Assembly (NCBI GenBank): GCA_002269645.1
Contig: NIVC01000158.1
Coordinates: 124,001-188,000, forward strand
Length of the DNA stretch: 64,000 nucleotides
DNA from: Macrostomum lignano
Lineage: Eukaryota
Direction: 5' to 3'
The position numbers and the translations under genes are program-made. Numbering within the stretch: position 1 is the stretch's first letter; each line of letters begins with the position of its first letter. Below the pieces are notes generated by a model, which saw only the letters and a program-made list of their open reading frames with translations, had not been told where the DNA came from and did not search any database. Below are positions 12,542 through 38,269 of this stretch, in pieces.

Positions 12542-15242
12542 CTGTCTTAGGCCTATGTCAAGTGTTGTTACTTATTTTTTATTAACACAATTAAATATAT
12601 ACATGTACTTCTTTTCTGAGTATAGAAATAGTCATTGTTTCTAGAAATTTTACCATATTGCATAAAAAAGATGACCTTATAAAATGAGTTGGGCCCACCA
12701 AATTTGTCAATCTCAAATTTGTCAACAGGTAGAAAATGTAAGTAATTGATGCCCCACTCCCAAATCTTACATGTATGTTAGAAAATTCTGGTGAGTGGTG
12801 TGCAACAGACCTTAAAAATGGTTGGCATAAAGTATCCTTCATAATAGAATTCTAGTAATAGTAGAGTAGCTTGCTTAATAAATAGGTACAAAATGAATGC
12901 AAGAACAAACATTAACTTGTTTTTATTTACTTTAATTTAATTGCCAATGCATTTCAACCCTTGTAGCCCATTGCCAGGGCAGTAATGAAATTTAAAGTTT
13001 TAATAAACAGTTGAATAAATATACCTATAATAATTTAAATATACAAGATCAATTAATATACATAGTTTTCAATTGAAACAAGTTTTAACATATAGTGCAG
13101 TAGCGTATACTCTAAGCTAAAACACACTGAGTTGGTGGCTGGCACCCCCCAATAGCTAGCTAGTAGTTTGGGCTCAGGTTTTGATCTTTGATACATATAG
13201 CCTCTAAGATGTTTAAAGTGTGCTCATGGTGGTATTGGCAACAATCAATAATCTTAAATAAGATTATTCTTTAGAAGGAAAATTACATTGAAAAAGAGAA
13301 AAATGCCCATAGCCTCTATTAGTAGGCTAACAAGTTCAGAATCAATATTTTCTGACTTTAGAATTCATGCTAGTAGCATTTTTGTAACTATATGATTTTG
13401 TCATACTTGTAATAATAATAATATAGGCATGGTTTTTGCTATATTTGGGATCATAAATCATTGTTTATAAGCTTGTCTGAGCCATCTGAACAATTGAAAT
13501 TAACATCTATATCCGCTCTTTTAATTTAGGAAAATATTCCATATTCCATACTTTTGCAAACATTCCATATCTGTTTCCACATCTGCATCCACTTCCACAT
13601 CTGTATCTGCTTCCAAATTTTAGTAGATGCCCAGAGTGAGCATATGGCGTAGCTATAAGCATACAAAAGACTAAAATTTTATAATCTAAAAAGGGTCTTG
13701 CATTATTGCAACACAATTTAATGGCATTGGGGGTCATTTTTCTGGCATACTGTATAATAGATTTGAGAATGTAGAATTGATAGAAGTCAAATTTATCAAA
13801 TAATAGTTCAAACAAGCTGAGCAAATTTGTCAACAATAAAATAGACTTAAAGTTGTTCCTGGCTTAGTTCAATAACATATCTTTTAATTTAATTAGTCAA
13901 TTAAAAGTAAAATTAGGCTACAATAAAGTTGTTTTATCTAAACTTTATCTTATGCTTTTCAAATGTGCTTTTTAAAACTGTTCAATCATTCTTAAATATG
14001 CATGACTATCTAATTTCTTTTGATTAAATATATTTTTCTATCAAATATCATATGGGCTTTAGTATAAAATCACTAAATAGGTAAACTAATTGGTCATTTG
14101 GCCAAAGAGTGTTATGTTCATTGATTACATGTGGTAAGAGACTATTGAATTAAAGATGAGCTAAGATAAGCTTAGTAGGCATTTGACTTGTCATTGTGTC
14201 ATTTGCATAGTTCTTTACAATGGCTTTTTAAAAAATGCAAAGCAAAATTTTGGGAAGAATGAAACTTTTACAAGCATTTAAAGAAAGCCTTGCATATAAT
14301 TTGCTTTAATTCATCAATGTAAAAAGACTTTATACCAAATTTGTCTAGATTGTTGCTAAAATTGCTTTTGTTGAATTTGTCCACATTATATTTTTGTTGC
14401 CCAATTTTTTTATCTCTGTTGTAAAAATTGAATAAGGCTGAGGACCATTAATTGAATTAGTAAATAAGAAATAAGAATTAAAGTGTTCACTAGGACACCT
14501 GCTATAGAAAGTATATATTTATTTGACTCAATGTCCCGCACTCTACAATGCAATAACCACCCCATAATTCACACTGAGGGGGAATGCCAAGTATACAACT
14601 GATGCCTCATAAGCTAGAAGGTATAAGTAGATACAACTAACCATGGAAATTGCTATTGCTAAATAAAGAAAGCAGAATAAAATAAAAGAATAGCTAGGAC
14701 CCCGATTGTTGATTTAATTGATTGAATCTTTCATAGATATTGTCTAGGTATAAAACTAAAATCTTGGTACTCTAACCCATTATTTGTAATATGATTATTC
14801 TTTACTTGTGTTTTGTTTTGTATTCTATATAACAAACAACTTTGGTTAATGCATTATATTAGAACAAGTTATTAGAGGAGAATTATTTAATTGATTTGTC
14901 TACAAAAAGATAATTCAAAGTTTAAATGCTAAACTAAACTGGTCATATATAAAAATGCAACTTGCATTTTTTCACAATCTTCTCAACTAACTAGAAAGAA
15001 ATCTATCCTTTGAACTTTTAAAAATATGTTTTTATGTCCAACTAATTAACAATTGGTAGCCTACTATACTTAAACTCAGCCTTTTGACATTAACAAACCA
15101 TAAGGTGTAGTCAATTTATTGTCTAAAACATTATGAACAATAATAGTGGCATTATCTAAATTTTAATTCTTGTCTTTTATGCTCATGGATAATATTTGTG
15201 TCTGAAATGTTAATTAAAAGGTGGCCTTTCCTGATTTCAGTC

Positions 15243-15353
15243 ATGGATGAAGTACCCTACCTAGTGGTAGGGACTGAAGTGAGTGCAAAGTACAGAGGTG
15301 CATTCTGTGAAGCCAAAGTGAAGCGAATTGATGAAAAGAAGGTGCAATGCAAG
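15243..15353 (+). CDS. ARID4: ARID4A/B-like protein, coding exon 1 (Tudor domain start)
   Basis: [27 protein letters not shown] matches the ARID4 N-terminus ([22 protein letters not shown]). Preceded by a TTTCAG acceptor at 15240. Donor GTAAAA at 15354, phase 0. Confidence 0.92.
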
Positions 15354-15493
15354 GTAAAACGCTTTTCTTTTGTAGCATTTTCTCATTCTCATTCCGGTTT
15401 TTAAACATTCTATGACATTTTTTCTTCACTTTTTCAACATGCTTACTAGTAGTAGCATAATTAATAAAATCAAATTAATGATCCACCGCTCAG

Positions 15494-16336: not shown

Positions 16337-16399
16337 GTGAGTACTCTGTTCACTGTTGGGACTCTGGTTTCCGATCTTCTACTGCTTGCTTCGAACTAA

Positions 16400-19300: not shown

Positions 19301-22300
19301 TCACTTATCCCAAATCCTCAGCTTCATTCCTCACTTATCCCAAATCCTCAGATTCATTCCTCACTTATCCCAAATCCTCAGATTCATTCCTCACTGATCC
19401 CAAATCCTCAGATTCATTCCTCACTTATCTCATATCCTCAGATTCATTCCTCACTTATCCCAAATCCTCAGATTCATTCCTCACTTATCTCATATCCTCA
19501 GATTCATTCCTCACTGATCCCAAATCCTCAGATTCATTCCTCACTTATCCCAAATCCTCAGATTCATTCCTCACTGATCCCAAATCCTCAGATTCATTCC
19601 TCACTTATCCCAAATCCTCAGATTCATTCCTCACTTATCCCAAATCCTCAGATTCATTCCTCACTTATCCCAAATCCTCAGATGCATTACTCACTTATCC
19701 CAAATCCTCAGATGCATTCCTCACTTATCCCAAATCCTCAGATTCATTCCTCACTTATCCCAAATCCTCAGATTCATTCCTCACTTATCCCAAATCCTCA
19801 GATTCATTCCTCACTTATCCCAAATCCTCAGATTCATTCCTCACTTATCCCAAATCCTCAGATTCATTCCTCACTTATCCCAAATCCTCAGATTCATTCC
19901 TCACTGATCCCAAATCCTCAGATGCATTACTCACTTATCCCAAATCCTCGGATTCATTCCTCACTGATCCCAAATCCTCAGATTCATTCCTCACTGATCC
20001 CAAATCCTCAGATTCATTCCTCACTTATCCCAAATCCTCAGATTCATTCCTCACTGATCCCAAATCCTCAGATTCATTTCTCACTTATCCCAAATCCTCA
20101 GATTCATTCCTCACTGATCCCAAATCCTCAGATTCATTCCTCACTTATCCCAAATCCTCAGATTCATTCCTCACTGATCCCAAATCCTCAGATTCATTCC
20201 TCACTTATCCCAAATCCTCAGATTCATTCCTCACTTATCCCAAATCCTCAGATTCATTACTCACTTATCCCAAATCCTCAGATTCATTCCTCACTTATCC
20301 CAAATCCTCAGATTTATTCCTCACTTATCCCAAATCCTCAGATTCATTACTCACTGATCCCAAATCCTCAGATTCATTCCTCACTTATCCCAAATCCTCA
20401 GCTTCATTCCTCACTTATCCCAAATCCTCAGATTCATTCCTCACTTATCCCAAATCCTCAGAGTCATTCCTCACTTATCCCAAATCCTCAGATTCATTCC
20501 TCACTTATCCCAAATCCTCAGATTCATTCCTCACTTATCCCAAATCCTCAGATTCATTACTCACTTATCCCAAATCCTCAGATTCATTCCTCACTTATCC
20601 CAAATCCTCAGATTCATTCCTCACTTATCCCAAATCCTCAGATTCATTCCTCACTGATCCCAAATCCTCAGATTCATTCCTCACTTATCCCAAATCCTCA
20701 GATTCATTCCTCACTTATCCCAAATCCTCAGATTCATTCCTCACTTATCCCAAATCCTCAGATTCATTCCTCACTTATCCCAAATCCTCAGATTCATTCC
20801 TCACTTATCCCAAATCCTCAGATTCATTCCTCACTTATCCCAAATCCTCAGATTCATTACTCACTTATCCCAAATCCTCAGATTCATTCCTCACTTATCC
20901 CAAATCCTCAGATTCATTCCTCACTTATCCCAAATCCTCAGATTCATTCCTCACTTATCCCAAATCCTCAGATTCATTCCTCACTTATCCCAAATCCTCA
21001 GATGCATTACTCACTTATCCCAAATCCTCAGATTCATTCCTCACTTATCCCAAATCCTCAGATTCATTCCTCACTTATCCCAAATCCTCAGATTCATTCC
21101 TCACTTATCCCAAATCCTCAGATTCATTCCTCACTTATCCCAAATCCTCAGATTCATTCCTCACTTATCCCAAATCCTCAGATTCATTCCTCACTTATCT
21201 CAAATCCTCAGATTCATTCCTCACTTATCCCAAATCCTCAGATTCATTCCTCACTTATCCCAAATCCTCAGATTCATTCCTCACTTATCCCAAATCCTCA
21301 GAGTCATTCCTCACTTATCCCAAATCCTCAGATTCATTCCTCACTTATCCCAAATCCTCAGATTCATTCCTCACTGATCCCAAATCCTCAGATTCATTCC
21401 TCACTTATCTCATATCCTCAGATTCATTCCTCACTTATCCCAAATCCTCAGATTCATTCCTCACTTATCTCATATCCTCAGATTCATTCCTCACTGATCC
21501 CAAATCCTCAGATTCATTCCTCACTGATCCCAAATCCTCAGATTCATTCCTCACTGATCCCAAATCCTCAGATTCATTCCTCACTTATCCCAAATCCTCA
21601 GATTCATTCCTCACTTATCCCAAATCCTCAGATTCATTCCTCACTTATCCCAAATCCTCAGATTCATTCCTCACTTATCCCAAATCCTCAGATGCATTAC
21701 TCACTTATCCCAAATCCTCAGATGCATTCCTCACTTATCCCAAATCCTCAGATTCATTCCTCACTTATCCCAAATCCTCAGATTCATTCCTCACTTATCC
21801 CAAATCCTCAGATTCATTCCTCACTTATCCCAAATCCTCAGATTCATTCCTCACTTATCCCAAATCCTCAGATTCATTCCTCACTTATCCCAAATCCTCA
21901 GATTCATTCCTCACTGATCCCAAATCCTCAGATGCATTACTCACTTATCCCAAATCCTCGGATTCATTCCTCACTGATCCCAAATCCTCAGATTCATTCC
22001 TCACTGATCCCAAATCCTCAGATTCATTCCTCACTTATCCCAAATCCTCAGATTCATTCCTCACTGATCCCAAATCCTCAGATTCATTCTCACTTATCCC
22101 AAATCCTCAGATTCATTCCTCACTGATCCCAAATCCTCAGATTCATTCCTCACTTATCCCAAATCCTCAGATTCATTCCTCACTGATCCCAAATCCTCAG
22201 ATTCATTCCTCACTTATCCCAAATCCTCAGATTCATTCCTCACTTATCCCAAATCCTCAGATTCATTACTCACTTATCCCAAATCCTCAGATTCATTCCT

Positions 22301-22822
22301 CACTTATCGCAAATCCTCAGATTCATTCCTCACTTATCCCAAACCCTCAGATTCATTCCTCACTTATCCCAAATCCTCAGATTCATTCCTCACTTATCCC
22401 AAATCCTCAGATTCATTCCTCACTTATCCCAAATCCTCAGATTCATTCCTCACTTATCGCAAATCCTCAGATTCATTCCTCACTTATCCCAAATCCTCAG
22501 ATTCATTCCTCACTTATCGCAAATCCTCAGATTCATTCCTCACTTATCCCAAATCCTCAGATTCATTCCTCACTTATCCCAAATCCTCAGATTCATTCCT
22601 CACTTATCCCAAATCCTCAGATTCATTCCTCACTTATCCCAAATCCTCAGATTCATTCCTCACTTATCCCAAATCCTCAGATTCATTCCTCACTTATCCC
22701 AAATCCTCAGATTCATTCCTCACTGATCCCAAATCCTCAGATTCATTCCTCACTGATCCCAAATCCTCAGATTCATTCCTCACTTATCCCAAATCCTCAG
22801 ATTCATTCCTCACTTATCTCAA
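16400..22822. repeat. 30-bp minisatellite (CCCAAATCCTCAGATTCATTCCTCACTTAT), about 214 units, ARID4 intron 2
   Basis: Exact 30-nt periodicity with recurring variant units and a single 1-bp deletion near 22090. Confidence 0.99.
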
Positions 22823-22916
22823 ATGCGGCGTGTATTAGTATAGTTTTGTAACAAACTCAAACTACGTTACTGTTAGTAGAAAAAGAGGAGTATTTTTGTC
22901 AAATTATAATATACAG

Positions 22917-23791
22917 TTGGAGACTCGCGAGCTGCCCTACAACTGGTCTTGCTCCGACCTGATTGGCGAAGAGTCCGACTCCTCTGGCGAAGAATCCGAA
23001 GCTAGCAGCGTTGACGATCCCATCGAGCAGGAGGCTCAAGACCACTGGATTGCGCAACTGTACGGCTTTATGGACGATCGCAGCACGCCTATAGGCAAAA
23101 CGCCGGCAGTTGGTAATAAAGATTTGAATCTGTTCCGGCTGTACCACCTGGTGAAGCGATTCGGCGGCTACAATCGGGTTACTAGCCAGCTGAAGTGGCG
23201 CATTGTGCACAGCAAGCTGGGTTTGCCAGCTACCAGTTCCACTACTAAGCTCAAATCCGCTTATCAACGCTACCTGCTACCGTTTGAGGAGTTCGACAAG
23301 AAGCTCGGCTCTTCGTTCACCACCGGCATTGGCGGCGGCCTGCGCGGTCGATCGTCAATGTCGGCATCAGCGTCGGGCTCCGCGGCTGCATCCGCTGGCG
23401 CCTCTGCCGGTTCAGCGTCTGGCGCTGGCGCCGCCTCGTCCGGTATGGCGTCGCAGCACCTGGCTGGCGCGCCGGGCTCCTCCAGCGGCAGCAGCGGCCG
23501 CAACTTCTTGTCCGCCCGCGAGAAGCGCCAGTCCGGCCTGACTCCGGTGAAACGGCCGCGAGTTCAAGCCGCCGCTGCTAAGGCTAATAAGGAGGCCAAA
23601 GCTGCTAAGGAGGCTGGGAAAGACAAGGATGCCGCGTCGGTGTCTGCTGAATCGAACTCTACCGTGGCTTCCTCGTCGACTGCCGCCGCTACCGCCACTG
23701 CCAATCCTGCAGCTGCCGACTGCGCGTCATCCACTTCAACAGCAACTGCCGCCGGCCTACTGGATGACCAGGCTCCGCCTAGTCTGTCCAG
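22917..23791 (+). CDS. ARID4: ARID4A/B-like exon 3 (ARID/BRIGHT domain)
   Basis: LYGFMDDRSTPIGKTPAVGNKDLNLFRLYHLVKRFGGYNRVTSQLKWRIVHSKLGLP..LKSAYQRYLLPFEEF is an ARID domain. TACAG acceptor at 22916. Donor GTAGTG at 23792, phase 2. Confidence 0.93.
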
Positions 23792-23959
23792 GTAGTGCTA
23801 GTAGCTTTTTAATACATTTCTGAACTATATGGTATCTGTTGCATTGGCGACATCTTCGATATTTTAGAATATACCCCCAGCGAATATACTTGAAAATATC
23901 CGCCTCTAAACTACCGTCACATATTCAACAGAATAGGCCTTTATTTATCTTTAAAAAAT

Positions 23960-24570
23960 CTCCGAGAATCGCCCTCAAAGTCCTGAGCATCGTCTTCAAA
24001 TCAGAGAATCAGCCACTTTAAATCTCAGAGCATCAGCCTCAAGATCTTCTTAGAGAATCGCCCTCAAATATTTTCAGAGAGTTGTCATCAAATCTCAGAG
24101 AACGCCCTCAAATCTCTTCAGAGAATTGCCCTCAGATCTCAGAGAATCGCCCTCAAATCTCAGAGCATCAGCCTCAAATCTCCTTAGAAAATCGCCCTCA
24201 AATATTTTCTGAGAATCGCCCTCAGATCTCCTCAGAGAATCGCCCTCAAATCTCCCCAGAGAATCGCCCTGAGATCTCAGAGAATCGCTCTCAAATATCC
24301 TCAGAGAATCGCCTTCAAATCTCCTTAGATAATCGCCCTCAGATCACCTCAGATAATCGCCCTCAGATCACCTCAGATAATCGCCCTCAGATCACCTCAG
24401 AAAATCGCCCACAAATCTCCTCAGATCTCAGAGAATCGCCCTCAGATATTCTCAGCGAATCGTCATCAAATCTCTTCAGAGTATCGCCCTCAAATATTTT
24501 CAGAGAATCGCTTTCAAATCTCGGAGAATCGCTTTCAAATCTCGGAGAATCGCCCTCAAATCTCCTCAGA
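23960..24570. repeat. Degenerate 21-24 bp repeat (GAGAATCGCCCTCAAATCTC) in ARID4 intron 3
   Basis: Recurring AGAATCGCCCTCA core. Confidence 0.88.
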
Positions 24571-24616
24571 GAAACGCATTCATAGCTAAAATTTACCCTG
24601 AATAACCGACCCCCAG

Positions 24617-25157
24617 GTCCAGCAGCGTGTTCGAACGTGTCGAAGCGCCATCAAACGCCTCGGATGTCGCCACCGCTGCCAACGCAGCCAACAAGCTTGC
24701 CGATGCTGTTGAAAGTAAGGACAACGACGATGAAGGCAACTCGTCGGCTGGCAGCGGCGCAGGCGACGCCTACCAAGTAGACGACAAGGTGCGGGTCCGC
24801 TACGGCGAGCCCGGCCGCTACAAAGTCTACGACGGTAGAATTGTAAAGAGATCCTGGCGCGCCAATCGGGTCAGCTATCACGTGCACTATTTCGGCTGGA
24901 ATCAACGCTACGACGAGATTGTGACGCCCGATCGGATTCTCGGTCGCTGCCACCGCGGCCACGCTGTTGGCAGGCTCAACCACGGCCAGCCGCTGTCTTC
25001 GCTGCCGCCGCCGCCACCGCCGCCGCCGCCGCTTGCCGCGTCGGCTTCGAAGGCGAAATCAACGTCGAAATCGCCAGCCAGACTGCGGTCGGAGAGCGAG
25101 TCGCTGAGCAGTCCCAGCCCTGTGCAGGCGGATGTGCAGAAGGCCAGGCGAAGAAAG
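24617..25157 (+). CDS. ARID4: ARID4A/B-like exon 4 (chromo-barrel/Tudor-knot domain)
   Basis: KVRVRYG..YDGRIVK..YHVHYFGWNQRYDEIV is a chromo-barrel. CCCCAG acceptor at 24616 matches phase 2. The donor GTTGGT at 25158 (phase 0) is weaker, so the 3' boundary is less certain. Confidence 0.88.
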
Positions 25158-25930
25158 GTTGGTTTTGCTAGATGTATTGTTTTAATTTACTCAATTATAA
25201 GACTAAAAAGTTGGTGCGTCAAAAAACGGTACAACCGTATCAGAAATTGGAACTTAGCTTTGGATTTCAGACATTTGAGTGTGTGAGAAAATGTGACAAG
25301 AAACTGTTTTTTTTTAGACCCGAAAACTACAATCTAGTGCCCTTCGGGGCGCCGAATAAGCAAGGGAGGAAAATTATTAATGTGAATCCTTTAAAATGAA
25401 AGCACAATGCTCACAATGGCTATAAAGTTTATTTTCTGCTTGGCTTTAGCAAAAAGCGTATTTTTAAATACTTTTTCCCCCGCTAATGGCAATAAATAAT
25501 GAATAATCCCTTTTTCAGCGTGTTTACACAAAGAACAAGAAAAAATATGCATTACAATTTTTTAATTCGATACTCTGTATCTGTAATATCTACAATTGCA
25601 AAAAGTCATAAATTTGTTATGATGTTCTTGCAGAAGGCTTTGCCAACAAGATTTTTCATTAGTTTCAATCTTACTACTTGTCGGCTTGCTTTACTCTGCA
25701 TAGCTGGTCAGAGGCATTCACGGAGCATGTAAATTTTATGCATTATTACTAATGAGCATGTAGAAACAGTTATAACCCTCCTCCGTTTGCAACCGGGCTT
25801 GGGACCGGCTTTGGCGGAGTTAAAACCATCACAAGAGACTGACTATCTGGGGTTTGCAAAGGCTGCTTCAAACCCCCCTCTGGCAGCATTTTTGAAATAT
25901 TGATAACAACAACAACAACAAAATAGGCAG

Positions 25931-26083
25931 CCCTGCATTCAAGGTCACAGGCTAGGCGCGTCAGATGGCGCGCCGCAGAGCTTGAGAGCGCACAAAGTCC
26001 GCCCCGTTGGCAGTGTCGGGCGCCCCAGCGTTGAATCGAAGGCAGTCCACGCATCGACGGGTTGCCTGAACGGGCCCTGCAAG
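25931..26083 (+). CDS. Possible symmetric cassette exon of ARID4-like gene (51 aa)
   Basis: GC-rich open frame PCIQGHRLGASDGAPQSLRAHKVRPVGSVGRPSVESKAVHASTGCLNGPCK between CAG (25930) and GTCAGT (26084), phase 0/0. No recognisable homology. Confidence 0.3.
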
Positions 26084-26635
26084 GTCAGTAGCCCTCGGCA
26101 CGGATCACGTGGCCCACCAGTTGAAGTCGCAGCCGGCGCAGGATGATGGACGGGCGCTGCAGCTGGAAAGTAAAGCAGATTACTGTAGCCGCCTTCACTG
26201 TTTGACCGCGATAGAACATTTGCACCATCACAAAAAAAGAATATCTATGTCCCTCAGCTATTGAACTTAAACTTTCAGCGACTGTGATCGGCCTAAATGA
26301 TTTCTATCTAAACTTGGACACGCCAGTTTGCCCCTATAGCCAAATAAAGCTTCAATCTTGACATGTGATCGCTGTAGTTGATGTCCCGGATGAAATTGAC
26401 CGCGCATTCTATAAACGTAAACCACCGCTTGGGTTGGACAGAATCGTCGTTTTCATCATCAGAGTCGAATTAAGCACAGTAAAGCTTGAGCAAAAGAAGA
26501 CTTTTCTTTAACAACTTGTCAACCACTACGAGTGTGTGTTAATTATTACTACTAGTAGGCTAACATGTACTCGTAGCTACTTAATCGAACGTTCCTCTAT
26601 CGGTCTTCCAAATTGACTTTCCCAACGCCAAGCAG

Positions 26636-27814
26636 GTGTCGCACTCCTACGTTCAACAGCACGGCCCGAATTCGTCGCCGACAAGCTGCTCCTCGGCCGA
26701 CGGTCGGGCATCGGCGGCGGCAGCGGCCGCGGCGAACACAACAGCGGCTCAGACAGCCGCCCCCGACTCTGCCGCCGTCAATCTTGACATTTTATCTTCG
26801 CCGGCGCGCCAGACGTCCAACGCTGGCGACGCCGACGACGACTGGCAGAGCGGTAAAACGTCGGCCGCCGTGATGGACGAAGAAGATGACGTTGAAGACG
26901 ACGACGATGAACGATGCGGAGCCGCCTCCGAGACAGCCTCGGCGACAGTTGCCTCCGCTGCCGCCGCTCGTGCCGACGCCGCGGAAAGCAGCGACGGCGG
27001 CAAAAGCTCCCTAGCCGTCAGCAGCGTCGGCGGGCGTCGTCACCGTAACGATTCCGGCTCTCGCATCGACGAAGCCGATGACGACGGCGACGTTGAGGAT
27101 GAAGTTGAAGAGGAGGACGACGACGACGGCAAGTCCCGGGCGAATGGCGCCAGCGCCGCCGCTGCCGCCGGCCCCGCCAATCGTCGGAGGCCTGGGCGAC
27201 GCGGACGCGCAAAAAATCAACATCAGCAGCAGCAGCGTCCGTCGTCGGCGGTGCCGCCTTCGCCGACGCCGTCGTCAGTTGCTGGCGTCGGGCAGCAGCA
27301 GCAGCCGGACGACGATGAGGAAGCTGACGACGACGGCGAAGACGAGGCAGCTTCGGTCACCACCGATGATCGAGCGGCTTCTGCTGCGCCTGCTGCTGCT
27401 ACTGCACAGTCAACTGTGGCCTCCACCCCGACGCCCGGCTCAGCCGGTGGTCGCCCGGCTCCGGGGTCCAAGCGACGCGCTCGTCGCAGCGTCGGCTCCT
27501 CCTTGTCGAACTCAACCGTCGCCGCATCGGCCGGACAAACGCCCGGTCGCCGTCAGCCGGACAGGCCGAAGTATGTCCGGCCAGCCGATCAGCCGTTTGT
27601 GAGCAAATACGGCAGCTTCATGCCGCCAGACTTGGACGCTCACGATCACGCCACTCGTGTCCGGATGCTGTCCGAAGCGATCGCTCGGGTGCGCGAAGCC
27701 TGGCGCTCGGAGAAGCAGGCGCTATCGGAGCTGGACAAGCGCTACAGGCTGCAGAGGAAGCGGGCCAGGCTCGAGTCCGAGCGAGCGGCGGGTGCCGGCG
27801 GTCAGGCCAATTAG
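26636..27814 (+). CDS. ARID4: ARID4A/B-like terminal exon (low-complexity region plus C-terminal coiled coil)
   Basis: GCAG acceptor at 26635, phase 0, stop TAG at 27812-27814. RVRMLSEAIARVREAWRSEKQALSELDKRYRLQRKRAR resembles the ARID4 C-terminal segment ([36 protein letters not shown]). Predicted protein is about 1180 aa. Confidence 0.88.
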   Translation: MSHSYVQQHGPNSSPTSCSSADGRASAAAAAAANTTAAQTAAPDSAAVNLDILSSPARQTSNAGDADDDWQSGKTSAAVMDEEDDVEDDDDERCGAASETASATVASAAAARADAAESSDGGKSSLAVSSVGGRRHRNDSGSRIDEADDDGDVEDEVEEEDDDDGKSRANGASAAAAAGPANRRRPGRRGRAKNQHQQQQRPSSAVPPSPTPSSVAGVGQQQQPDDDEEADDDGEDEAASVTTDDRAASAAPAAATAQSTVASTPTPGSAGGRPAPGSKRRARRSVGSSLSNSTVAASAGQTPGRRQPDRPKYVRPADQPFVSKYGSFMPPDLDAHDHATRVRMLSEAIARVREAWRSEKQALSELDKRYRLQRKRARLESERAAGAGGQAN

Positions 27815-29139
27815 CGGTAGCAGGAATTGGCCGGGGCATTTTCAATTTCTCGTTATCAGCATGGCAACACAGGGGTAGTTTCGGTCAACTATCACATTTG
27901 CGCCAATAGTCTGTCTGATTTGGTTATAGTGTCTGTTTTAAGTAGTAGCTTCATTGACCGAACTGACTCCGTCTGGAGACTGCATTATAACAAACTAGTG
28001 TGCTCATTTATTGTTGCCTTTTCTATGAAATGAAAGACGTCTCTTTTATATGGCAATTAAAAAAGGCAAGTTTTCGACCGAATAATAATAACTGAACGAT
28101 TCACTTAGTTTTCTACTTTCAACTCAGTAGTAAGCGACAATGTGTAAGCTATTTTATGAAAAGAATGACCAAAGTTGGAGTGACTGGTAGACAGGGCATT
28201 GTGAACGACTCACTAGTGACTCTAGCAACGGTTCAAGCGACTCTAATACGACGAAGAGGCGACTGTTGAGTCACGAGCGCGTCGCGTGAGCTGCAGAATC
28301 AAAGCAAAAAAATTATTTCTTTCCAATTTTACCTGTGCTACCTGCAAGGAATCTGGAATAAATCTGACGCGACGCAAAAGTGATTCTGGGACGCCGTAAT
28401 GTACATTAGTCTGCGCCAAAAAGAATGTACATTGCGTGAGGTATTATTTGTTTATCTGTTGCATTGCTCATATCTGTACACACTGTGGCTAGCGATGAGC
28501 ATGCATCAGCGATGTCCCCTGCTGATTACTTCTGTCTGGCGCTATTTATGCGTTCGCTACTTGTCAAGCTCTGCTTTTCCACTGCCTGTAGATAATTATA
28601 ATCACCGTACTTATTAACTTTGCTTTTCTTATGCGCGCTCTCCACTAAATTGAAAGTTTTCCGTTATTGCTTATTAATTATTAATAAATTGATTGAATTC
28701 TATATTGTGCCTGCTAGCCGTACTAGTGCAGTATTCTCTCCGCTCTCTCAGTTTCGCATCTCCAGCTGCCCCCCCCCCTGGCACGTCGGATGAACTTCCA
28801 TTCAGTTTAGTCAGTTTTTATACGAAATAACAGTTGGTCTACTCCTCTATTGGCCCTCATTAATTGTATATAAGTTCATATATGGAAGCCACTTCTGGTT
28901 TGTTTCGTTTGCATTCTCCGTGTGTGTTTTTTTTTACTTTTAAAATTATTAACTGAATTATAATATAAAAGGTGGCTTAACTAAAAGCTAATTGACAAGC
29001 TTCAAATTACTGATAAAATTTTAACTGAATGTTTATTTATTTAACTATTTATAATATTAGTAGGAAGATTGTACTTTTCTTTTTTGTTCAATTATCAGTA
29101 AGAAAACACGATTAATGATTTAGTTGGATAGCAAACAAA

Positions 29140-29450
29140 TTACAATGACCTCATTATCCCACCTTATGACCCACCTTATGACCTCACAATTCCATTCTAT
29201 GATCATTGTGTTTCATTGTATGATTCTTCTATCCTTTGTCTTCACAGCTCCATCGTATGACCTTACAGCTCTATCATATGATCCCACAGCTTTTCCTTAT
29301 GACCCCACAGCTCCTTATAAACCCACAGCCTTTTGACCCCACAGCTCTGCCTTATGACCCCACACCTCCTTCTTATGACCCCACAGCTCCATTTTATGAC
29401 CTCGCACGTCTATTCTATGATTGCATAGTTTCCATTACCCCATAGTTTGA
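29140..29450. repeat. Degenerate ~20-bp repeat (CTTATGACCCCACAGCTC) upstream of Rab9
   Basis: Recurring TATGACC..ACAGCT. Confidence 0.75.
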
Positions 29451-29512
29451 TTTAGTGTACACAAAGCCAAAACACGCTCTGACCGTTTAGACTGAATTCC
29501 CCATTGCCGCAG

Positions 29513-30175
29513 CCGCGCTCCCAGCTACTCAAAGTGATCCTACTCGGAGACGGCGGCGTTGGCAAGTCGTCGTTAATGACTCGCTACGTGCAGCAGCGCT
29601 TCGATCCGCACCAGCATCACACCATCGGGGTGGAATTCCTAGTTAAAGAGGTCAGCCTGTCTGACGGGTCCCGGTACACCCTGCAGATCTGGGACACCGC
29701 CGGCCAGGAGAGATTCCGATCGCTGCGCACCCCGTTCTACCGCGGCGCCGACGCGTGCATGCTGGTGTACAGCCTGGAGGATTCGAAATCGTTTGCTAAT
29801 TTAAACATCTGGCGTCAGGAGTTCTTTCATTATTCCGGCGTGGAATCAGGCGAATTTCCATTTCTTCTAGTTGGCAATAAGAGCGACTCGGAGCGGGCCG
29901 CGGTGCCAGCTGATCAGGCCGAGGCCTGGGCTACAGAGCTGGATATGCCGCACTTATTAACCTCGGCTAAGAGTGCTCACAATGTTGACCAAGCGTTTGA
30001 GCAGTTGACTAGTCTATGGGCTAAGCGTCAACTGATTGGCTTAGCGCGCGGCGGATCCGCGGATCAGGATAATGATAATGAGGTTCGCGATGTGGGCACC
30101 GTGCGAATTAGGCGAGGCGGCGGCGAAAGTGCCGCTGGCAGTGTTGGCGGCTACCGTCGTCGGTGCTGTAATTGA
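29513..30175 (+). CDS. RAB9: Rab9 small GTPase (single coding block; initiator ATG must come from splicing)
   Basis: LLKVILLGDGGVGKSSLM, HTIGVEFL, WDTAGQERFRSLRTPFYRG (Rab9-type switch II), GNKSD, TSAK and a C-terminal CCN prenylation motif. There is an in-frame TGA at 29480-29482 and no ATG before the P-loop. CAG acceptor at 29512. Confidence 0.95.
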   Translation, partial: PRSQLLKVILLGDGGVGKSSLMTRYVQQRFDPHQHHTIGVEFLVKEVSLSDGSRYTLQIWDTAGQERFRSLRTPFYRGADACMLVYSLEDSKSFANLNIWRQEFFHYSGVESGEFPFLLVGNKSDSERAAVPADQAEAWATELDMPHLLTSAKSAHNVDQAFEQLTSLWAKRQLIGLARGGSADQDNDNEVRDVGTVRIRRGGGESAAGSVGGYRRRCCN

Positions 30176-30224: not shown

Positions 30225-30974
30225 AATATAGCTATTTGCAGCCCAGTTGGGCTTAAGCGCATTGAATTGAATCCAAGATAGGTTTGCCAAAGTACTGGAG
30301 CTTTCGTCTATGGTGGCAGGGCTGGCACGGCGGCATTTACTTTGGTCCAACAAGCATCAATTTGGTCCGTAACTTCATTTGCAACTGCTGTGGTGGAGCA
30401 AGATCAGCCCCAGTATTGTGGGCCATATGCTAGGCTGCCGAACGAATGCCATTGGCTTGTGATCGAAGCGCTCAACAGAGATGAACACCCAAAGGACATT
30501 GCAAGGTTGCTGAATGTAAAAAAATAATGGTTTACAGCATCCATCAGCGCGTTGAAACCACTGCCGGCAGAAATAGCCTGCAAATGGGTGGCAATCGCCA
30601 AGGCAAGTTTCTCAAGAACCTCAAGTCCAACTGCTACTCAATGCAGTTGAGACGAACCCTTTGTTTTTCGGTGCAGAAAATGCAGCAGAAGTTGAAGGCA
30701 CAGTTTCAGTTGGTTATCAGATTTTGACTATCAGCAGAGCTCTGGAAAAGCGACTGAAAATTTTTGGTAGAGACGCTGACATTCCAGCGGTACGCAACAA
30801 CCCACAGGTTGTGAGAAGGCAGGAGTTTGCCGAATGGCTCACGAGCGTTTGGACCAAATTAAATGCCGCTGTGCCAGCCTTGCTACCATAGACAAAAGCT
30901 CCAGTACATTGGCAAACCTATCTTGGAGTAAATTCAATACGCGTAGGCCCAAATGGGCTGCAAAAAGCTATATT
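30225..30974 (+). mobile_element. Internally deleted Tc1/IS630-like transposon with ~126-bp TIRs
   Basis: Inverted repeats at 30225-30350 and 30849-30974 with TA-containing ends. The frameshifted internal remnant LVIEALNRDEHPKDIARLLNVKK/VYSIHQRVET..GGNRQGKF/LLLNAVETNP/TISRALEKRL..PAVRNNPQVVRRQEFAEWL is a transposase HTH region. No DDE domain remains. Confidence 0.78.
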
Positions 30975-33418: not shown

Positions 33419-33886
33419 TTCTTGCTGCTCCTGTCCGTGTTGCAGAAGTCTTTCAGTTCCCCTCTCCTAGCCCTTTGCCCTCCACTCTGCCACAATGCTT
33501 GTAAAACTGTCGTCGCTATGCTATAGTTATACAAATATTGTACTTGTTTATTCGTTTCCTATCGGTGTTTGCAATAGATTCTTTGCTACTACTTACATAT
33601 AATCTTTCCTGACCCAGCAGATCTAGTTGTTTCTCTATTACCCTGTTTCTCTATTAATCTATTTGAGCTCATATTAATTTTTCTCTTGTAATTTTGATTT
33701 TTTTATTTACACTAACCAGACTGTCAGATTTCCAATAAATTCTCAACAGAAAGATCTGCTAATATTGATAGATTTTTTCACTTATTTATTAACTGATTGC
33801 TTGCGACTTCTATAGTTTCCTTACTACAAGCTAGCTGCTATTGATGGTGTCTAGATTAGCAATCCGCCCCATCTCAGCTCAACAGC

Positions 33887-34151
33887 ATGATCAGCTCAAT
33901 CGATGAAGCCAAATGTGTTAAACAAGAGAAGGCGTCTGAGACGGAAGAAGAAATTGATGAAGCTTCGTTTCACACGGCCAACTGCCAGCCTCCTGACAGC
34001 TCCTGCGACGACGGCGGCGGATGGAGCCGGCTGAGCCTGCACGAGGATGAGGCTGGCGAGGAGAAGCTCATCTATTCGGATGCTGAGGACAATGAAGAGG
34101 AGCTGGCTGCGGCTTCTGCTCGGAGGAAGCGGACGGCGCTGCGGCCCACGG
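33887..34151 (+). CDS. Uncharacterised RSB-motif nuclear protein, copy 1 exon 1 (acidic)
   Basis: CAG|C ATG at 33887, acidic N-terminus with VKQE. GTGAGA donor at 34152, phase 1. The reading frame is kept in both duplicate copies. Confidence 0.75.
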
Positions 34152-35321: not shown

Positions 35322-36077
35322 ATGATCTCATGAGCTATGACTAACTGGATTCTTGTATGACCTCATCTCATCTCTGACTGACTGGATTCTTGTATGACCT
35401 CATCAGCTATGACTGAATGGATTCTTGTATGACCTCATCAGCTATGATCAACTGGATTCTTGTATGAGCTCATCAGCTATGACTGACTGGATTCTTGTAT
35501 GACCTTATCAGCTATGACAGACTGGATTCTTGTATGACCTCATCAGCTATGATAACTGGATTCTTGTATGAGCTCATCAGCTATGACTGACTGGATTCTT
35601 GTATGACCTCATCATTTATGACTGACTGGATTCTTGTATGACCTCATCATCTATGACTGACTGGATTCTTGTATGACCTCATCAGCTATGATAACTGGAT
35701 TCTTGTATGACCTCATCAGCTATGACTGACTGGATTCTTGTATGACCTCATCAGCTATGATCAACTGGATTCTTGTATGACCTCATCAGCTATGATCAAC
35801 TGGATTCTTGTATGAGCTCATCAGCTATGACTGACTGGATTCTTGTATGACCTTATCAGCTATGACAGACTGGATTCTTGCATGACCTCATCAGCTATGA
35901 TCAACTGGATTCTTGTATGACCTCATCAGCTATGACAGACTGGATTCTTGCATGACCTCATCAGCTATGATCAACTGGATTCTTGTATGACCTTATCAGC
36001 TATGACAGACTGGATTCTTGCATGACCTCATCAGCTATGGTCAACTGGATTCTTGTATGAGCTCATCAGCTATGACT
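35322..36077. repeat. 35-bp minisatellite (TATGACCTCATCAGCTATGACTGACTGGATTCTTG); copy 2 at 47296-48016
   Basis: Fills intron 3. Copy 2 is one unit (35 bp) shorter. Confidence 0.95.
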
Positions 36078-36137
36078 GAGCCCAGATTCTCCATAAGCCG
36101 TACAAATTCAGCCATCCGCCCCATCCTGGCACCGCAG

Positions 36138-36643
36138 CTGGCGGCTCCGCTTGCCCCGCCTCCGCCGCCGGACCCCTACGAGTCGGTCTTCGACGTGGCC
36201 GCCCTGGAAGCCGCCGCTGGCGTCGAGCAGCTCCGACGCGACCGTCGCCGGCTGCACCCGAACTCGCGCCCGTTCCCGCCGGACTTCGAGGCCACCGGCG
36301 GCCGGCTGCCGCTGCCACTCGACCATTCCTCAGGCGTCGACATTGCCGACAATGGTCGGAGACGCCGACAACAGGCTCCGGCAGTGCTGCATCATTTTCC
36401 GCGCTGTATGAAGCCGTTCGAAGCGGATGAGTTGCATCAAGAATTGAGCAGTAGCAATTGCATGCCGAGGGCTGCATCCGATGATGATGAGGCTGCGGTG
36501 AAGCTGAACTGGCTGGACGACAGCAGCCGCTGGCCGGACGCTCTGGACAAGCTGCGCCGACAGCTGGCCGCCCTGTTGAAGGTGCCGTTCGCTCGGACCG
36601 CTGTTGCTAGGCTGGAAAGACCGTCTGACTGCACCGACTGGTG
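36138..36643 (+). CDS. RSB-motif protein copy 1 exon 4
   Basis: GC3-rich open frame. The phase-0 CCGCAG acceptor at 36137 is the best fit but the start is uncertain. GTGAGT donor at 36644, phase 2. Confidence 0.7.
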
Positions 36644-36644
36644 G

Positions 36645-37130
36645 TGAGTTAGAGGGAGAGTTTGATGTGATGTCTGGTAGAGTTAGAGGGAGAGTTTGAT
36701 GTGATGTCTGGTACAGTTAGAGGGAGAGTTTGCTGTGATGTCTGGTAGAGTTAGAGGGAGAGTTTGATGTGATGTCTGGTAGAGTTAGAGGGAGAGTTTG
36801 ATGTGATGTCTGGTAGAGTTAGAGGGAGAGTTTGCTGTGATGTCTGGTAGAGTTAGAGGGAGAGTTTGATGTGATGTCTGGTAGAGTTAGAGGGAGAGTT
36901 TGCTGTGATGTCTGGTACAGTTAGAGGGAGAGTTTGCTGTGATGTCTGGTAGAGTTAGAGGGAGAGTTTGATGTGATGTCTGGTAGAGTTAGAGGGAGAG
37001 TTTGCTGTGATGTCTGGTAGAGTTAGAGGGAGAGTTTGCTGTGATGTCTGGTAGAGTTAGAGGGAGAGTTTGATGTGATGTCTGGTAGAGTTAGAGGGAG
37101 AGTTTGCTGTGATGTCTGGTAGAGTTAGAG
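36645..37130. repeat. 34-bp minisatellite (GAGTTAGAGGGAGAGTTTGATGTGATGTCTGGTA); copy 2 at 48584-49068
   Basis: About 14 units, starting at the exon 4 donor. Confidence 0.95.
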
Positions 37131-37171
37131 CGGGACTTTTATTTCTGGTAGAGTGGCAGGAAGTGTTTCAC

Positions 37172-37485
37172 AGGGGTCCAGTAGAGTGTGTAGGATTTCA
37201 AATCTCACGACTTGGAAGTCGGGGGTTCGATTCCCGGTCCCACTCGAAACAATTTGTGTCCCTGAGCAAGACACTTAACTTTGCATTGCTTCAGTTCAGC
37301 CAGCTGTAAAATGGGTGCCAGCATTAGCTGGGGTAATTCAAGGTGTGTGTGGCGATGGCGACCCCCCCCCCCCCAGTCCTTGGACTGAACAGCCGTACGC
37401 AGCCTTCAGATGCGCCACGCAATAGCTGCGGCTGAGCTGTCGGTTGCACATCTGGCCCAATTGGGGCAGGTGTAATCAATAATTA
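37172..37485 (+). mobile_element. tRNA-derived CORE-SINE
   Basis: B box GGTTCGATTCC 37224-37234, followed by TGTGTCCCTGAGCAAGACACTTAAC..CAGCTGTAAAATGGG (MIR-type CORE). Confidence 0.85.
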
Positions 37486-37589
37486 TTTTTATTGCTGGTA
37501 GATTAGAGCGGACAGTTGAATAGGGCGTTTGGTTTGGCAGTCTCTAAAAGTTGGGTATAGTGTATGGTAGAGTCTCGTGGAGTTGGATT

Positions 37590-37865
37590 GGTTGTCTGGT
37601 TGACTGGCGAGTTGGTTGTCTGGTAGAGTGGCGAGTTGGTTGTCTGGTAGAGTGGCGAGTTGGTTGTCTGGTAGAGTGGCAAGTTGGGTGTCGGGTAGAG
37701 TGGTAGAGTGGCGAGTTGGTTGTCTGGTAGAGTGGCGAGTTGGGTGTCTGGTAGAGTGGCGAGTTGGTTGTCTGGTAGAGTGGCGAGTTGGTTGTCTGGT
37801 AGAGTGGCGAGTTGGTTGTCTGGTAGAGTGGCGAGTTGGTTGTCTGGTAGAGTGGCGAGTTGGTT
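37590..37865. repeat. 24-bp minisatellite (GGCGAGTTGGTTGTCTGGTAGAGT); copy 2 at 49527-49800
   Basis: Tandem units sharing GTCTGGTAGAGT with the 34-bp array. Confidence 0.93.
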
Positions 37866-37911
37866 AGTTACCCGTACTCCTACCGCATGGTGTACTCGCG
37901 CTCCACCGCAG

Positions 37912-38233: not shown

Positions 38234-38269
38234 GTGAGTGAGCTGGCTGATTGACAGCTCGAATCAATC

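What the first reader, a model, noticed from the sequence alone, without database searches (positions are those of the whole stretch)
29480..29540. Rab9 has no initiator ATG: the start codon may be donated by the spliced leader
Seen in sequence: an in-frame TGA at 29480-29482 is followed by codons with no ATG until the Met in SSLMTRY, which lies after the GDGGVGKS P-loop. A CAG acceptor at 29510-29512 is in phase 0, so AUG|CCG gives MPRSQLLKVILLG, almost the same length as human Rab9 (MAGKSSLFKVILLG). I found no convincing upstream ATG-bearing exon in a compatible phase; the ATGT|GTAAGC candidate near 28140 is phase 1 and fits no acceptor. Established: flatworm spliced leaders end in a conserved AUG that can act as the initiator. 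Inference: Rab9 translation depends on SL trans-splicing. Rab9 lies 1.7 kb after the ARID4 stop on the same strand, so an ARID4-Rab9 operon is also possible.
Basis: partly seen in the sequence, partly recalled or inferred. Interest (0 to 1): 0.7.

Follow-up and report, generated by a model that had tools for sequence, protein, structure and literature searches.

The report
Rab9 start codon from spliced leader
A Rab9 GTPase gene of the flatworm Macrostomum lignano has no start codon of its own and most likely gets its AUG from the spliced leader RNA joined on at base 29513; this is a known flatworm mechanism, so it is a clean example rather than a discovery.

Summary
An in-frame TGA (29480-82) is followed by a Rab9 ORF (29513-30175) whose first in-frame ATG (29576) lies after the P-loop, and a CAG acceptor (29510-12) sits in phase 0.

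The window is Macrostomum lignano (NIVC01000158.1). Its published 35-nt spliced leader (SL) ends in ATG.

The evidence for an SL-donated AUG is indirect but consistent:
- All five Rab9 loci (two copies of this gene, three of an old paralog) lack an in-frame ATG between the upstream stop and a conserved CAG acceptor.
- Homology between the paralogs begins exactly at that acceptor.
- Both paralogs are under purifying selection (dN/dS 0.12).
- GenBank models start at the acceptor and are flagged partial.
- M+PRSQLL gives the usual Rab9 N-terminal length.

This supports ARID4-Rab9 co-transcription. It also means the acceptor is shared between cis- and trans-splicing.

No SL-bearing reads could be examined. 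The mechanism has been known since Cheng et al. 2006, so this is a new member of a known kind. A speculative extra: the 38 nt before the acceptor resemble a decayed SL.

The parts
29480..29482 (+). In-frame TGA that closes the Rab9 reading frame upstream. No ATG lies between it and the acceptor.
29475..29512 (+). 3' end of the outron, ending in the CAG acceptor (29510-29512). This 38-nt stretch also aligns colinearly with the whole 35-nt M. lignano SL. It may be a decayed SL relic; this is speculative.
29513..30175 (+). Single coding exon of Rab9 (PRSQLLKVILLG...RRRCCN, plus stop TGA 30173-30175). With the SL AUG it encodes a 221-aa protein.
29546..29569 (+). P-loop GDGGVGKS. It lies upstream of the first genomic in-frame ATG (29576-29578), so initiation at that ATG would give a non-functional GTPase.
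29525..29527 (+). First codon after the alternative in-phase acceptor (cccAG| at 29523-24). It would give M-LLKVILLG, with only 3 residues before the KVILLGD motif.
24615..25154 (+). Penultimate ARID4 exon. Its phase-0 donor (AAG|GTTGGT at 25155) is joined to 29513 in GenBank model PAA89222.1, and presumably to 26636 in normal ARID4 mRNA.
26636..27814 (+). Terminal ARID4 coding exon (acceptor aagcag|GTG, phase 0; stop TAG 27812-27814). The annotated ARID4-Rab9 fusion model skips it.
27815..29512 (+). ARID4 3'UTR plus intergenic/outron sequence (1,698 nt). Poly(A)-signal candidates are at 28056 (ATTAAA), 28357 and 28683 (AATAAA). Tandem repeats lie at 29158-29183 and 29243-29420.
29029..29097 (+). 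Rival candidate 5' mini-exon: an ATG, then 23 codons (MFIYLTIYNISRKIVLFFFVQLS), then a consensus GTAAGA donor in phase 0. There is no evidence that it is used.
15241..15356 (+). First annotated ARID4 coding exon (acceptor tttcag|TC). ARID4 has its own ATG at 15243-15245. The SL AUG would be out of frame here.

Best explanation
Proposed mechanism. Rab9 mRNA in Macrostomum lignano is made by trans-splicing the 35-nt SL (...UUAUUGCAUG) onto the CAG acceptor at 29510-12. The mature mRNA then reads ...UUGC-AUG|CCG CGC UCC CAG CUA CUC AAA... The SL's terminal AUG is the initiator of a 221-aa Rab9 (MPRSQLLKVILLGDGGVGKS...RRRCCN). The gene itself encodes everything except the start codon.

Source of the pre-mRNA. 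It is at least partly read-through from ARID4, 1.7 kb upstream on the same strand (operon-like). The ARID4 donor at 25154 can use the same acceptor in cis, which gives the chimeric ARID4-Rab9 model now in GenBank.

Shown:
- the sequence layout;
- its conservation in five loci and two ancient paralogs;
- purifying selection on both paralogs;
- annotation starting at the acceptor;
- the annotated cis junction.

Taken from the literature:
- the SL sequence;
- the prevalence of trans-splicing in this species;
- SL-AUG initiation in flatworms.

Inferred:
- that SL is joined at 29513 on this gene;
- that ribosomes start at that AUG.
For: 1. Organism. The window is 100% identical to NIVC01000158.1 of M. 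lignano assembly GCA_002269645.1. The SL ends in ATG, and 30-39% of genes are SL trans-spliced (PMC8629364; PMC5730564). The figure legend of PMC10468722 calls the terminal ATG the translation start codon. SL-AUG initiation in flatworms was established by Cheng et al. 2006, as cited in PMC9851317 and PMC12582326.

2. No genomic start. Only 10 sense codons separate the TGA from the acceptor, and none is ATG. The first ATG comes after the P-loop. The Ras domain starts at residue 7 of the exon.

3. Conservation. The duplicate locus L002 and three loci of paralog Rab9-2 all have CAG|CCGCGCTCCCAG with no in-frame ATG before the upstream stop. Alignment between the paralogs starts exactly at the acceptor, and upstream sequence cannot be aligned. 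No conserved upstream exon was found by blastn or tblastx.

4. Function. Between the paralogs dN/dS = 0.12 with dS = 2.05. The two Rab9-1 copies have 0 differences in 663 coding nt, against 1-2% in the flanks. The gene is therefore expressed and translated.

5. Annotation. GenBank CDSs for Rab9 start at the acceptor (Rab9-2) or 3 nt after it (L002), and all are 'partial'. The annotation pipeline cuts transcripts at sites mapped from SL-containing reads (PMC5730564).

6. N-terminal length. The SL AUG puts 7 residues before KVILLGD. Among 113 Met-starting Rab9-like proteins the minimum is 7 and the mode is 8.

7. The acceptor works. It is used in cis in model PAA89222.1 (...QKARRRK|PRSQLLK).

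8. Same layout in neighbouring genes. The RSB-motif gene (TTTGCAG|TCT, with no ATG) and the 542-aa gene also have the SL AUG in frame.
Against: - No SL-bearing read or cDNA for this gene could be inspected.
- Exact look-ups of MPRSQLL... and related forms found nothing in the protein collection.
- The supplements of the two annotation papers do not list the gene.
- The acceptor context CCGCAG does not fully match the enriched trans-splice motif [T/C]TNCAG, which is met by under half of known sites (PMC8629364).
- In this very locus the GenBank model is not cut at 29513. It runs in from ARID4 exons instead.
- The annotated CDS start in L002 is 3 nt after the acceptor, for reasons I could not explain.
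- 'Partial' status alone is weak evidence. ARID4's model also lacks its Met, although a genomic ATG is present at 15243.
Confidence: 0.8

Rival explanations
1. The Rab9 exon is an alternative terminal exon of ARID4. Under this reading the translated product is an ARID4(N-terminal)-Rab9 fusion protein started at ARID4's own ATG (15243), as in GenBank model PAA89222.1, and no SL AUG is needed.
For: The window's own annotation joins the 25154 donor to the 29513 acceptor in frame. Both are phase 0.
Against: - The duplicate locus annotates Rab9 alone.
- The paralog Rab9-2 lies behind Tim17, not ARID4. It has the same ATG-less acceptor and is annotated alone.
- An in-frame junction has a 1-in-3 chance of arising by accident.
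- A Rab needs a free N-terminal region and a prenylated C-terminus on a small GTPase fold.
- No Rab9-like hit other than this model carries such an N-terminal extension.
- Shared cis/trans acceptors are common in flatworms (PMC12582326).

The fusion is likely a minor read-through isoform or a transcriptional unit that the annotation pipeline did not cut.
Confidence: 0.07
2. A dedicated, unannotated 5' exon in the 1.7-kb spacer supplies the ATG and is cis-spliced to 29513. The best candidate is ATG 29029...29097|GTAAGA, which is phase 0.
For: This is the only ATG-to-GTRAG phase-0 candidate in 27815-29479. It is intact in the duplicate locus.
Against: - The two loci are about 99% identical here, so intactness says nothing.
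- No homologous exon lies upstream of Rab9-2.
- The candidate would add a 23-residue hydrophobic, AT-rich-encoded N-terminus unlike any Rab9.
- The L002 transcript model must begin between the in-frame stop and the CDS start. Otherwise a 5'-partial ORF would not have been called (inference).
Confidence: 0.04
3. SL is trans-spliced at the neighbouring in-phase acceptor 29523-24 (exon start 29525). The SL AUG is still used, but the product begins MLLKVILLG.
For: This AG is also phase 0 and is conserved in all five loci.
Against: - The AG is conserved anyway, because it is the Gln codon of the conserved PRSQ.
- PRSQ is conserved at protein and DNA level between paralogs with saturated dS.
- Three residues before KVILLGD is shorter than in any of 113 Rab9-like proteins.
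- The cis junction and the annotations use 29513.
Confidence: 0.04
4. There is no trans-splicing. Translation starts at a near-cognate codon (TTG 29504) or at the internal Met 29576 on an mRNA with its own promoter, or the locus is an untranslated pseudogene.
For: TTG at 29504 is in frame. No direct proof of SL addition was obtained.
Against: - The TTG is not conserved in the paralog, whose upstream frame reads ...KLYLQ.
- Starting at Met 29576 deletes the P-loop.
- dN/dS of 0.12 and identical coding sequences in the duplicates argue against a pseudogene.
Confidence: 0.03

Closest known systems
Flatworm mRNAs that use the SL 3'-terminal AUG as initiator methionine (Cheng, Cohen, Ndegwa and Davis 2006, J Biol Chem 281:733; 'slORFs' in PMC9851317)
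   Same: The SL ends in AUG. The acceptor is in phase 0 with the main ORF. There is no genomic in-frame AUG ahead of the essential N-terminal domain. The predicted N-terminus matches its orthologues.
   Different: The original work was on Schistosoma mansoni cDNAs and included translation assays. Here the case is a free-living macrostomid, it rests on genome comparison and annotation only, and neither the SL junction nor initiation was observed.
M. lignano SL trans-splicing and operons (Wudarski et al. 2017, PMC5730564; Ustyantsev and Berezikov 2021, PMC8629364)
   Same: The two genes are on the same strand, and the downstream gene begins at a CAG acceptor. An annotated transcriptional unit spans both genes.
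   Different: The raw spacer is 1.7 kb from stop to acceptor. It is about 0.8-1.4 kb from the candidate poly(A) signals and includes about 0.2-0.3 kb of tandem repeat. This is borderline for the published threshold of 1 kb after subtracting repeats. The acceptor CCGCAG departs from YTNCAG at one position.
Shared cis/trans 3' splice acceptors in parasitic flatworms (PMC12582326)
   Same: One acceptor (29513) serves both the presumed SL addition and cis-splicing from an upstream gene's donor.
   Different: Here the cis use crosses a gene boundary and skips ARID4's terminal exon. This produces a chimeric ORF that is probably a by-product.
Relict spliced leaders in dinoflagellate retrogenes (e.g. 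PMC6050394, PMC5585692)
   Same: An SL-like sequence lies directly upstream of the trans-splice junction of a gene with an intronless CDS.
   Different: The similarity here is weak (25 of 35 positions, 4 gaps, empirical P about 0.001-0.007) and concerns a single locus. The search I ran found no report of such relics in flatworms.

Membership tests
SL-AUG-initiated flatworm mRNA (Cheng et al. 2006 type) | The organism's SL ends in AUG immediately before the splice donor. | tested here: met
   The window is M. lignano. The published SL is ...TTATTGCATG followed by GTAAG (PMC8629364). No SL RNA gene lies in the window itself.
SL-AUG-initiated flatworm mRNA (Cheng et al. 2006 type) | The SL is actually trans-spliced to this gene at the proposed acceptor. 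| not testable with these tools
   No RNA reads were available. Indirect support only: CDS models start at or 3 nt after the acceptor and are partial, and the acceptor is used in cis.
SL-AUG-initiated flatworm mRNA (Cheng et al. 2006 type) | The SL AUG is in frame with the conserved ORF. | tested here: met
   The exon starts at 29513 in phase 0. AUG plus the exon gives a 221-aa Rab9.
SL-AUG-initiated flatworm mRNA (Cheng et al. 2006 type) | No genomic in-frame AUG is able to produce a complete protein. | tested here: met
   An in-frame stop lies 11 codons upstream with no ATG after it, in 5 of 5 loci. The first ATG is after the P-loop.
SL-AUG-initiated flatworm mRNA (Cheng et al. 2006 type) | Translation initiates at the SL AUG. 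| not testable with these tools
   This needs ribosome profiling, N-terminal proteomics or a reporter.
M. lignano operon (Ustyantsev and Berezikov 2021 criteria) | Adjacent genes on the same strand with no opposite-strand gene between them. | tested here: met
   The ARID4 stop is at 27814 and the Rab9 acceptor at 29513. No ORF of 80 aa or more lies between them on either strand.
M. lignano operon (Ustyantsev and Berezikov 2021 criteria) | Repeat-adjusted distance of less than 1 kb from the upstream gene's 3' end to the downstream trans-splice site. | tested here: inconclusive
   The ARID4 poly(A) site is unknown. Candidate signals at 28056, 28357 and 28683 give about 1.43, 1.13 or 0.80 kb, minus about 0.2-0.3 kb of tandem repeat.
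M. lignano operon (Ustyantsev and Berezikov 2021 criteria) | A polycistronic precursor spans both genes. | tested here: inconclusive
   GenBank model PAA89222.1 joins ARID4 exon 24615-25154 to Rab9 exon 29513-30175. The reads behind that model were not seen.
Rab9 subfamily GTPase | A Ras-fold GTPase with P-loop and DTAGQE switch II, best matches to Rab9A/B, and C-terminal prenylatable cysteines. | tested here: met
   PDB Rab9A/B E about 4e-57, against Rab7 at about 1e-44. Pfam Ras E 2.8e-51. The top named hits are Rab-9A/9B. The C-terminus is RRRCCN.

The most novel reading that the evidence does not exclude
Rab9-1 may be an old retrocopy, or a cDNA-conversion product, of an SL-bearing Rab9 mRNA.

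- The 38 nt before the acceptor align end-to-end with the 35-nt SL (25 of 35 positions).
- Loss of the T in ...GCATG would give ...GCAG. That turns the hard-wired SL AUG into an AG acceptor at exactly the old SL/exon junction, so the copy is trans-spliced again and receives its AUG back.
- The mirror image is seen in the RSB-motif gene next to Rab9-2. One copy has TTTGCAG|TCT. Two copies have ATTGCATG|TCT, with a genomic ATG exactly where the SL AUG would sit.

If this is general, a one-base toggle between the SL 3' end (TTGCATG) and an acceptor (TTGCAG, which fits the reported YTNCAG motif) could be one route by which flatworm genes gain or lose dependence on the SL AUG.
Probability: 0.2. Interest if true: 0.6.

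Novelty: new member of a known kind. Interest (0 to 1): 0.27.

Why it matters
For this gene, the result explains why every database model of M. lignano Rab9 is 'partial'. It also gives the likely true protein: 221 aa starting MPRSQLL.

It flags GenBank PAA89222.1 as a probable ARID4-Rab9 chimera.

More generally, it shows how ATG-less ORFs beginning at an in-phase AG should be handled when annotating flatworm genomes: add the SL AUG rather than calling them truncated.

The layout is conserved across paralogs whose synonymous sites are saturated. Dependence on the SL AUG can therefore be stable over long periods rather than a transient accident.

The mechanism itself is not new.

Tried and rejected
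1. Exact-sequence look-ups gave no transcript-derived proteins. I tried MPRSQLL..., MLLKVILLG..., MPQPRSQLL... (TTG start), MTRYVQQ... (internal Met) and the stop-to-stop ORF. None is in the 15-billion-protein collection.
2. The supplements of PMC5730564 and PMC5816591 have no occurrence of Mlig008114, RAB9 or ARID4. The Wasik 2015 paper is not held.
3. No SL RNA gene is in the window at up to 3 mismatches.
4. A search for a conserved 5' exon found nothing significant. I compared the Rab9-1 spacer with the three Rab9-2 spacers by blastn (word size 7) and tblastx.
5. Unanchored local alignment of the SL to the 50 nt upstream of the acceptor is not significant (P about 0.03-0.05). Other SL-like hits in the window are at chance level. 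Only the junction-anchored alignment stands out.
6. I first read L001 as a second locus. It is the window itself (100% over 34,930 nt), so the fusion model is the window's own annotation.
7. I could not explain why some GenBank CDS starts are offset from the AG acceptor: +3 for Rab9 in L002 and for the 542-aa gene, +5 for ARID4, and 0 for Rab9-2 and RSB. I therefore did not use the exact offsets as evidence.
8. Acceptor 29491 is rejected. The SL AUG would open a 52-codon out-of-frame ORF.

Full report
OBSERVATION

- TGA at 29480-29482 is in frame with a Rab-type ORF.
- The frame reads *PFRLNSPLPQ|PRSQLLKVILLGDGGVGKSSLMTRY... up to TGA 30173-30175.
- There is no ATG between the TGA and the P-loop (GDGGVGKS, 29546-29569). 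The first in-frame ATG is at 29576-29578.
- CAG at 29510-29512 places an exon start at 29513 in phase 0.
- The ARID4 ORF ends at TAG 27812-27814, which is 1,698 nt upstream on the same strand.

The protein is Rab9.
- The best solved-structure matches are Rab9A/B at E about 4e-57, ahead of Ypt7/Rab7 at about 1e-44 to 1e-47.
- The named database hits are Rab-9A/9B.
- The Pfam Ras domain starts at residue 7 of the exon-encoded peptide.

Starting at the internal Met would therefore remove the nucleotide-binding loop.

SOURCE OF THE WINDOW

The window is Macrostomum lignano, assembly GCA_002269645.1 (Mlig_3_7). Locus L001, fetched for protein P0121, is 100% identical to window 5246-40175. Window base 1 therefore corresponds to NIVC01000158.1:124001.

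Published facts on this species:
- M. lignano has a single 35-nt spliced leader (SL), CGGTCTCTTACTGCGAAGACTCAATTTATTGCATG, followed by GTAAG in the SL RNA gene.
- 30-39% of its genes are trans-spliced and about 15% are placed in operons.
- The enriched trans-acceptor motif is [T/C]TNCAG (PMC8629364; PMC5730564).

The use of the flatworm SL's terminal AUG as initiator was established by Cheng et al. 2006. It is cited as such in PMC9851317 and PMC12582326. PMC10468722 labels the Macrostomum SL's final ATG as the translation start codon.

WHAT THE ANNOTATION SHOWS

Three findings come from the GenBank gene models.

1. The window's own model (PAA89222.1, BOX15_Mlig008114g1, partial, 1009 aa; P0121) is an ARID4-Rab9 chimera.
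   - Its exons are 15246-15356, 15488-16345, 22917-23792 and 24615-25154, then 29513-30175.
   - The junction reads ...QKARRRK|PRSQLLK.
   - The donor is AAG|GTTGGT at 25155, in phase 0.
   - ARID4's normal last exon (acceptor aagcag|GTG at 26636, phase 0, stop at 27814) is skipped.
2. A diverged duplicate of the locus (L002, NIVC01000808.1, about 94-97% identical) annotates Rab9 alone as a 5'-partial CDS (P0001). That CDS starts at CGC, 3 nt after the same acceptor.
3. A second Rab9 gene, Rab9-2 (P0002, P0122-P0126), is 70% identical.
   - It has three copies (L003-L005).
   - It lies 2.0-2.8 kb downstream of a Tim17 gene on the same strand.
   - All its GenBank models are partial and start PRSQLL..., exactly at a TTTACAG| acceptor.

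COMPARATIVE EVIDENCE

- An alignment of the five 5' regions shows that similarity between Rab9-1 and Rab9-2 starts exactly at CAG|CCGCGCTCCCAGCT. Sequence upstream cannot be aligned.
- In all five loci the frame is closed 11-15 codons upstream of the acceptor with no ATG in between.
- No conserved exon-like segment is shared between the 1.7-kb Rab9-1 spacer and the three Rab9-2 spacers (blastn and tblastx).
- The paralogs are old and constrained. Over 176 codons dS = 2.05 (saturated), dN = 0.25 and dN/dS = 0.12.
- The two Rab9-1 copies have no difference in 663 coding nt, against 1-2% in the flanks.

Two functional genes have thus kept an ATG-less first exon behind an in-phase acceptor for a long time. 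That calls for an external start codon.

- Adding the SL AUG at 29513 puts 7 residues before KVILLGD. In 113 Met-starting Rab9-like proteins the minimum is 7 and the mode is 8.
- Acceptor 29525 is also in phase but leaves 3 residues.
- Acceptor 29491 gives a 52-codon out-of-frame ORF.
- The first 12 exon bases (CCG CGC TCC CAG) are identical between the paralogs, while 9 of the next 16 codons differ synonymously. This weakly suggests nucleotide-level constraint next to the junction or the AUG.

MECHANISM

The most likely reading (confidence about 0.8) is as follows.
- SL is trans-spliced at 29513.
- The SL AUG initiates a 221-aa Rab9, MPRSQLLKVILLG...RRRCCN.
- The pre-mRNA is at least sometimes a read-through transcript from ARID4. 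Only then could the ARID4 donor at 25154 reach the Rab9 acceptor in cis.

This is the shared cis/trans acceptor use described for parasitic flatworms (PMC12582326).

Whether the pair meets the published operon criterion (repeat-adjusted distance below 1 kb) depends on the unknown ARID4 poly(A) site. Candidate signals at 28056, 28357 and 28683 give roughly 1.4, 1.1 or 0.8 kb. About 0.2-0.3 kb of that is tandem repeat. I put operon-like co-transcription at about 0.5-0.6.

RIVALS

- The ARID4-Rab9 fusion as the real product is unlikely. The duplicate locus and the paralog are annotated alone, and the paralog is not next to ARID4.
- A dedicated 5' exon cannot be excluded from sequence alone. One phase-0 candidate with a consensus donor exists (ATG 29029 to 29097|GTAAGA), and it is intact in the near-identical duplicate. 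It has no counterpart at Rab9-2. It would add a 23-residue hydrophobic N-terminus unlike any Rab9.
- Near-cognate initiation at TTG 29504, internal initiation at Met 29576, and pseudogene status are contradicted by the lack of conservation of the TTG, by loss of the P-loop, and by the selection signal, respectively.

WEAK POINTS

- No SL-bearing read was seen.
- Exact look-ups for SL-initiated protein forms were negative. The annotation papers' supplements do not list the gene.
- The acceptor context CCGCAG departs from YTNCAG at one position.
- GenBank CDS starts are offset from the AG by +3 (Rab9 in L002, the 542-aa gene), +5 (ARID4) or 0 (Rab9-2, RSB) for reasons I could not determine.
- ARID4's model lacks its Met although ATG 15243 is in the genome. 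'Partial' on its own therefore proves little.

SIDE OBSERVATION WITH SOME NOVELTY

When anchored at the junction, the 38 nt upstream of the Rab9-1 acceptor align colinearly with the entire SL:

CACG--CTCTGACCGTTTAGACTGAATTCCCCATTGCCGCA-G
versus
CGGTCTCTTACTGCGAAGACTCAATTT---ATTGC---ATG

- 25 of 35 SL positions are identical.
- Against 6,000 random AG sites from the window and three other loci, the score is reached by 0.1-0.65% of sites under five scoring schemes, z about 3.
- Unanchored local alignment is not significant.
- The Rab9-1 CDS is intronless, while Rab9-2 has one intron.

A mirror case lies in the RSB-motif gene beside Rab9-2. One copy reads GTTCATTTGCAG|TCT. Two copies read GTTCATTGCATG|TCT, with a genomic ATG exactly where the SL AUG would be and the last 8 SL bases in front of it.

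Together these hint at cDNA-mediated copying of SL-bearing mRNAs. They also hint at a one-base toggle between TTGCATG (hard-wired AUG) and TTGCAG (acceptor with SL-donated AUG). SL relics of this kind are known in dinoflagellates. I found no report of them in flatworms. I rate this reading at about 0.2. The similarity was noticed post hoc, it concerns one locus, and a neutral relic should have decayed given the saturated dS.

VERDICT

The phenomenon is a known one in a species where it is expected, so this is a new member of a known kind with modest interest. Its practical value is for annotation: the true Rab9 N-terminus, and the chimeric status of PAA89222.1.

Noticed in passing
window 15246-30175 (GenBank PAA89222.1 / BOX15_Mlig008114g1): The deposited gene model for this locus is a chimera. 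ARID4 exons up to 25154 are joined in frame to the Rab9 exon at 29513, skipping ARID4's terminal exon 26636-27814. It is probably an uncut transcriptional unit or a minor read-through isoform.
   Followed up: yes
L004:19099-19111 versus L003:14185-14197 and L005:18059-18071 (RSB-motif gene next to Rab9-2): One gene copy starts at acceptor ...GTTCATTTGCAG|TCTTCT with no ATG. Two copies read ...GTTCATTGCATG|TCTTCT. In those two the AG is gone, and an in-frame genomic ATG sits exactly where the SL AUG would be, preceded by the last 8 nt of the SL.
   Followed up: partly
window 29475-29512: The outron end upstream of Rab9 aligns colinearly with the full 35-nt SL when anchored at the junction (25 of 35 positions; empirical P 0.001-0.0065). 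It may be a decayed SL relic of a retrocopy.
   Followed up: partly
window 29513-29524 versus L003-L005: The first 12 exon bases (CCGCGCTCCCAG) are identical between Rab9 paralogs whose synonymous sites are otherwise saturated (dS 2.05). Nine of the next 16 codons differ.
   Followed up: partly
window 16395-22824: A 6.4-kb satellite of 214 copies of a 30-nt unit (ACTTATCCCAAATCCTCAGATTCATTCCTC, 96% matches) fills an ARID4 intron. It accounts for the strongly negative GC skew there.
   Followed up: partly
window 30225-30350 and 30849-30974: 126-nt inverted repeats (90% complementary) flank 498 nt and begin 50 nt after the Rab9 stop. This looks like a small DNA-transposon or MITE insertion in or just after the Rab9 3'UTR. 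It is also present in the duplicate locus.
   Followed up: partly
window 29158-29183 and 29243-29420: Degenerate tandem repeats (12-nt and about 21-nt units, ...TTATGACCCCACAGCTCC...) lie directly upstream of the Rab9 acceptor region. Their copy number differs between the two Rab9-1 loci.
   Followed up: no
window 15236-15270: ARID4's first annotated exon follows acceptor tttcag|TC, with its own ATG 2 nt later (15243). An SL AUG joined here would be out of frame and would open an 8-codon overlapping uORF (MSWMKYPT*). The GenBank protein nevertheless lacks the Met.
   Followed up: partly
window 33861-33895, and window 35372-38895 versus 47309-50858: The downstream 542-aa gene begins 3 nt after acceptor tctcag|CTC (exon start 33878), with the SL AUG in frame (MLNSMISS...). 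Part of this gene region is tandemly duplicated about 12 kb further on at about 97% identity.
   Followed up: no
L002, L001, L003-L005 CDS starts: GenBank 5'-partial CDS starts sit +3, +5 or 0 nt from the AG acceptor, depending on the gene. This quirk of the deposited annotation is unexplained.
   Followed up: partly
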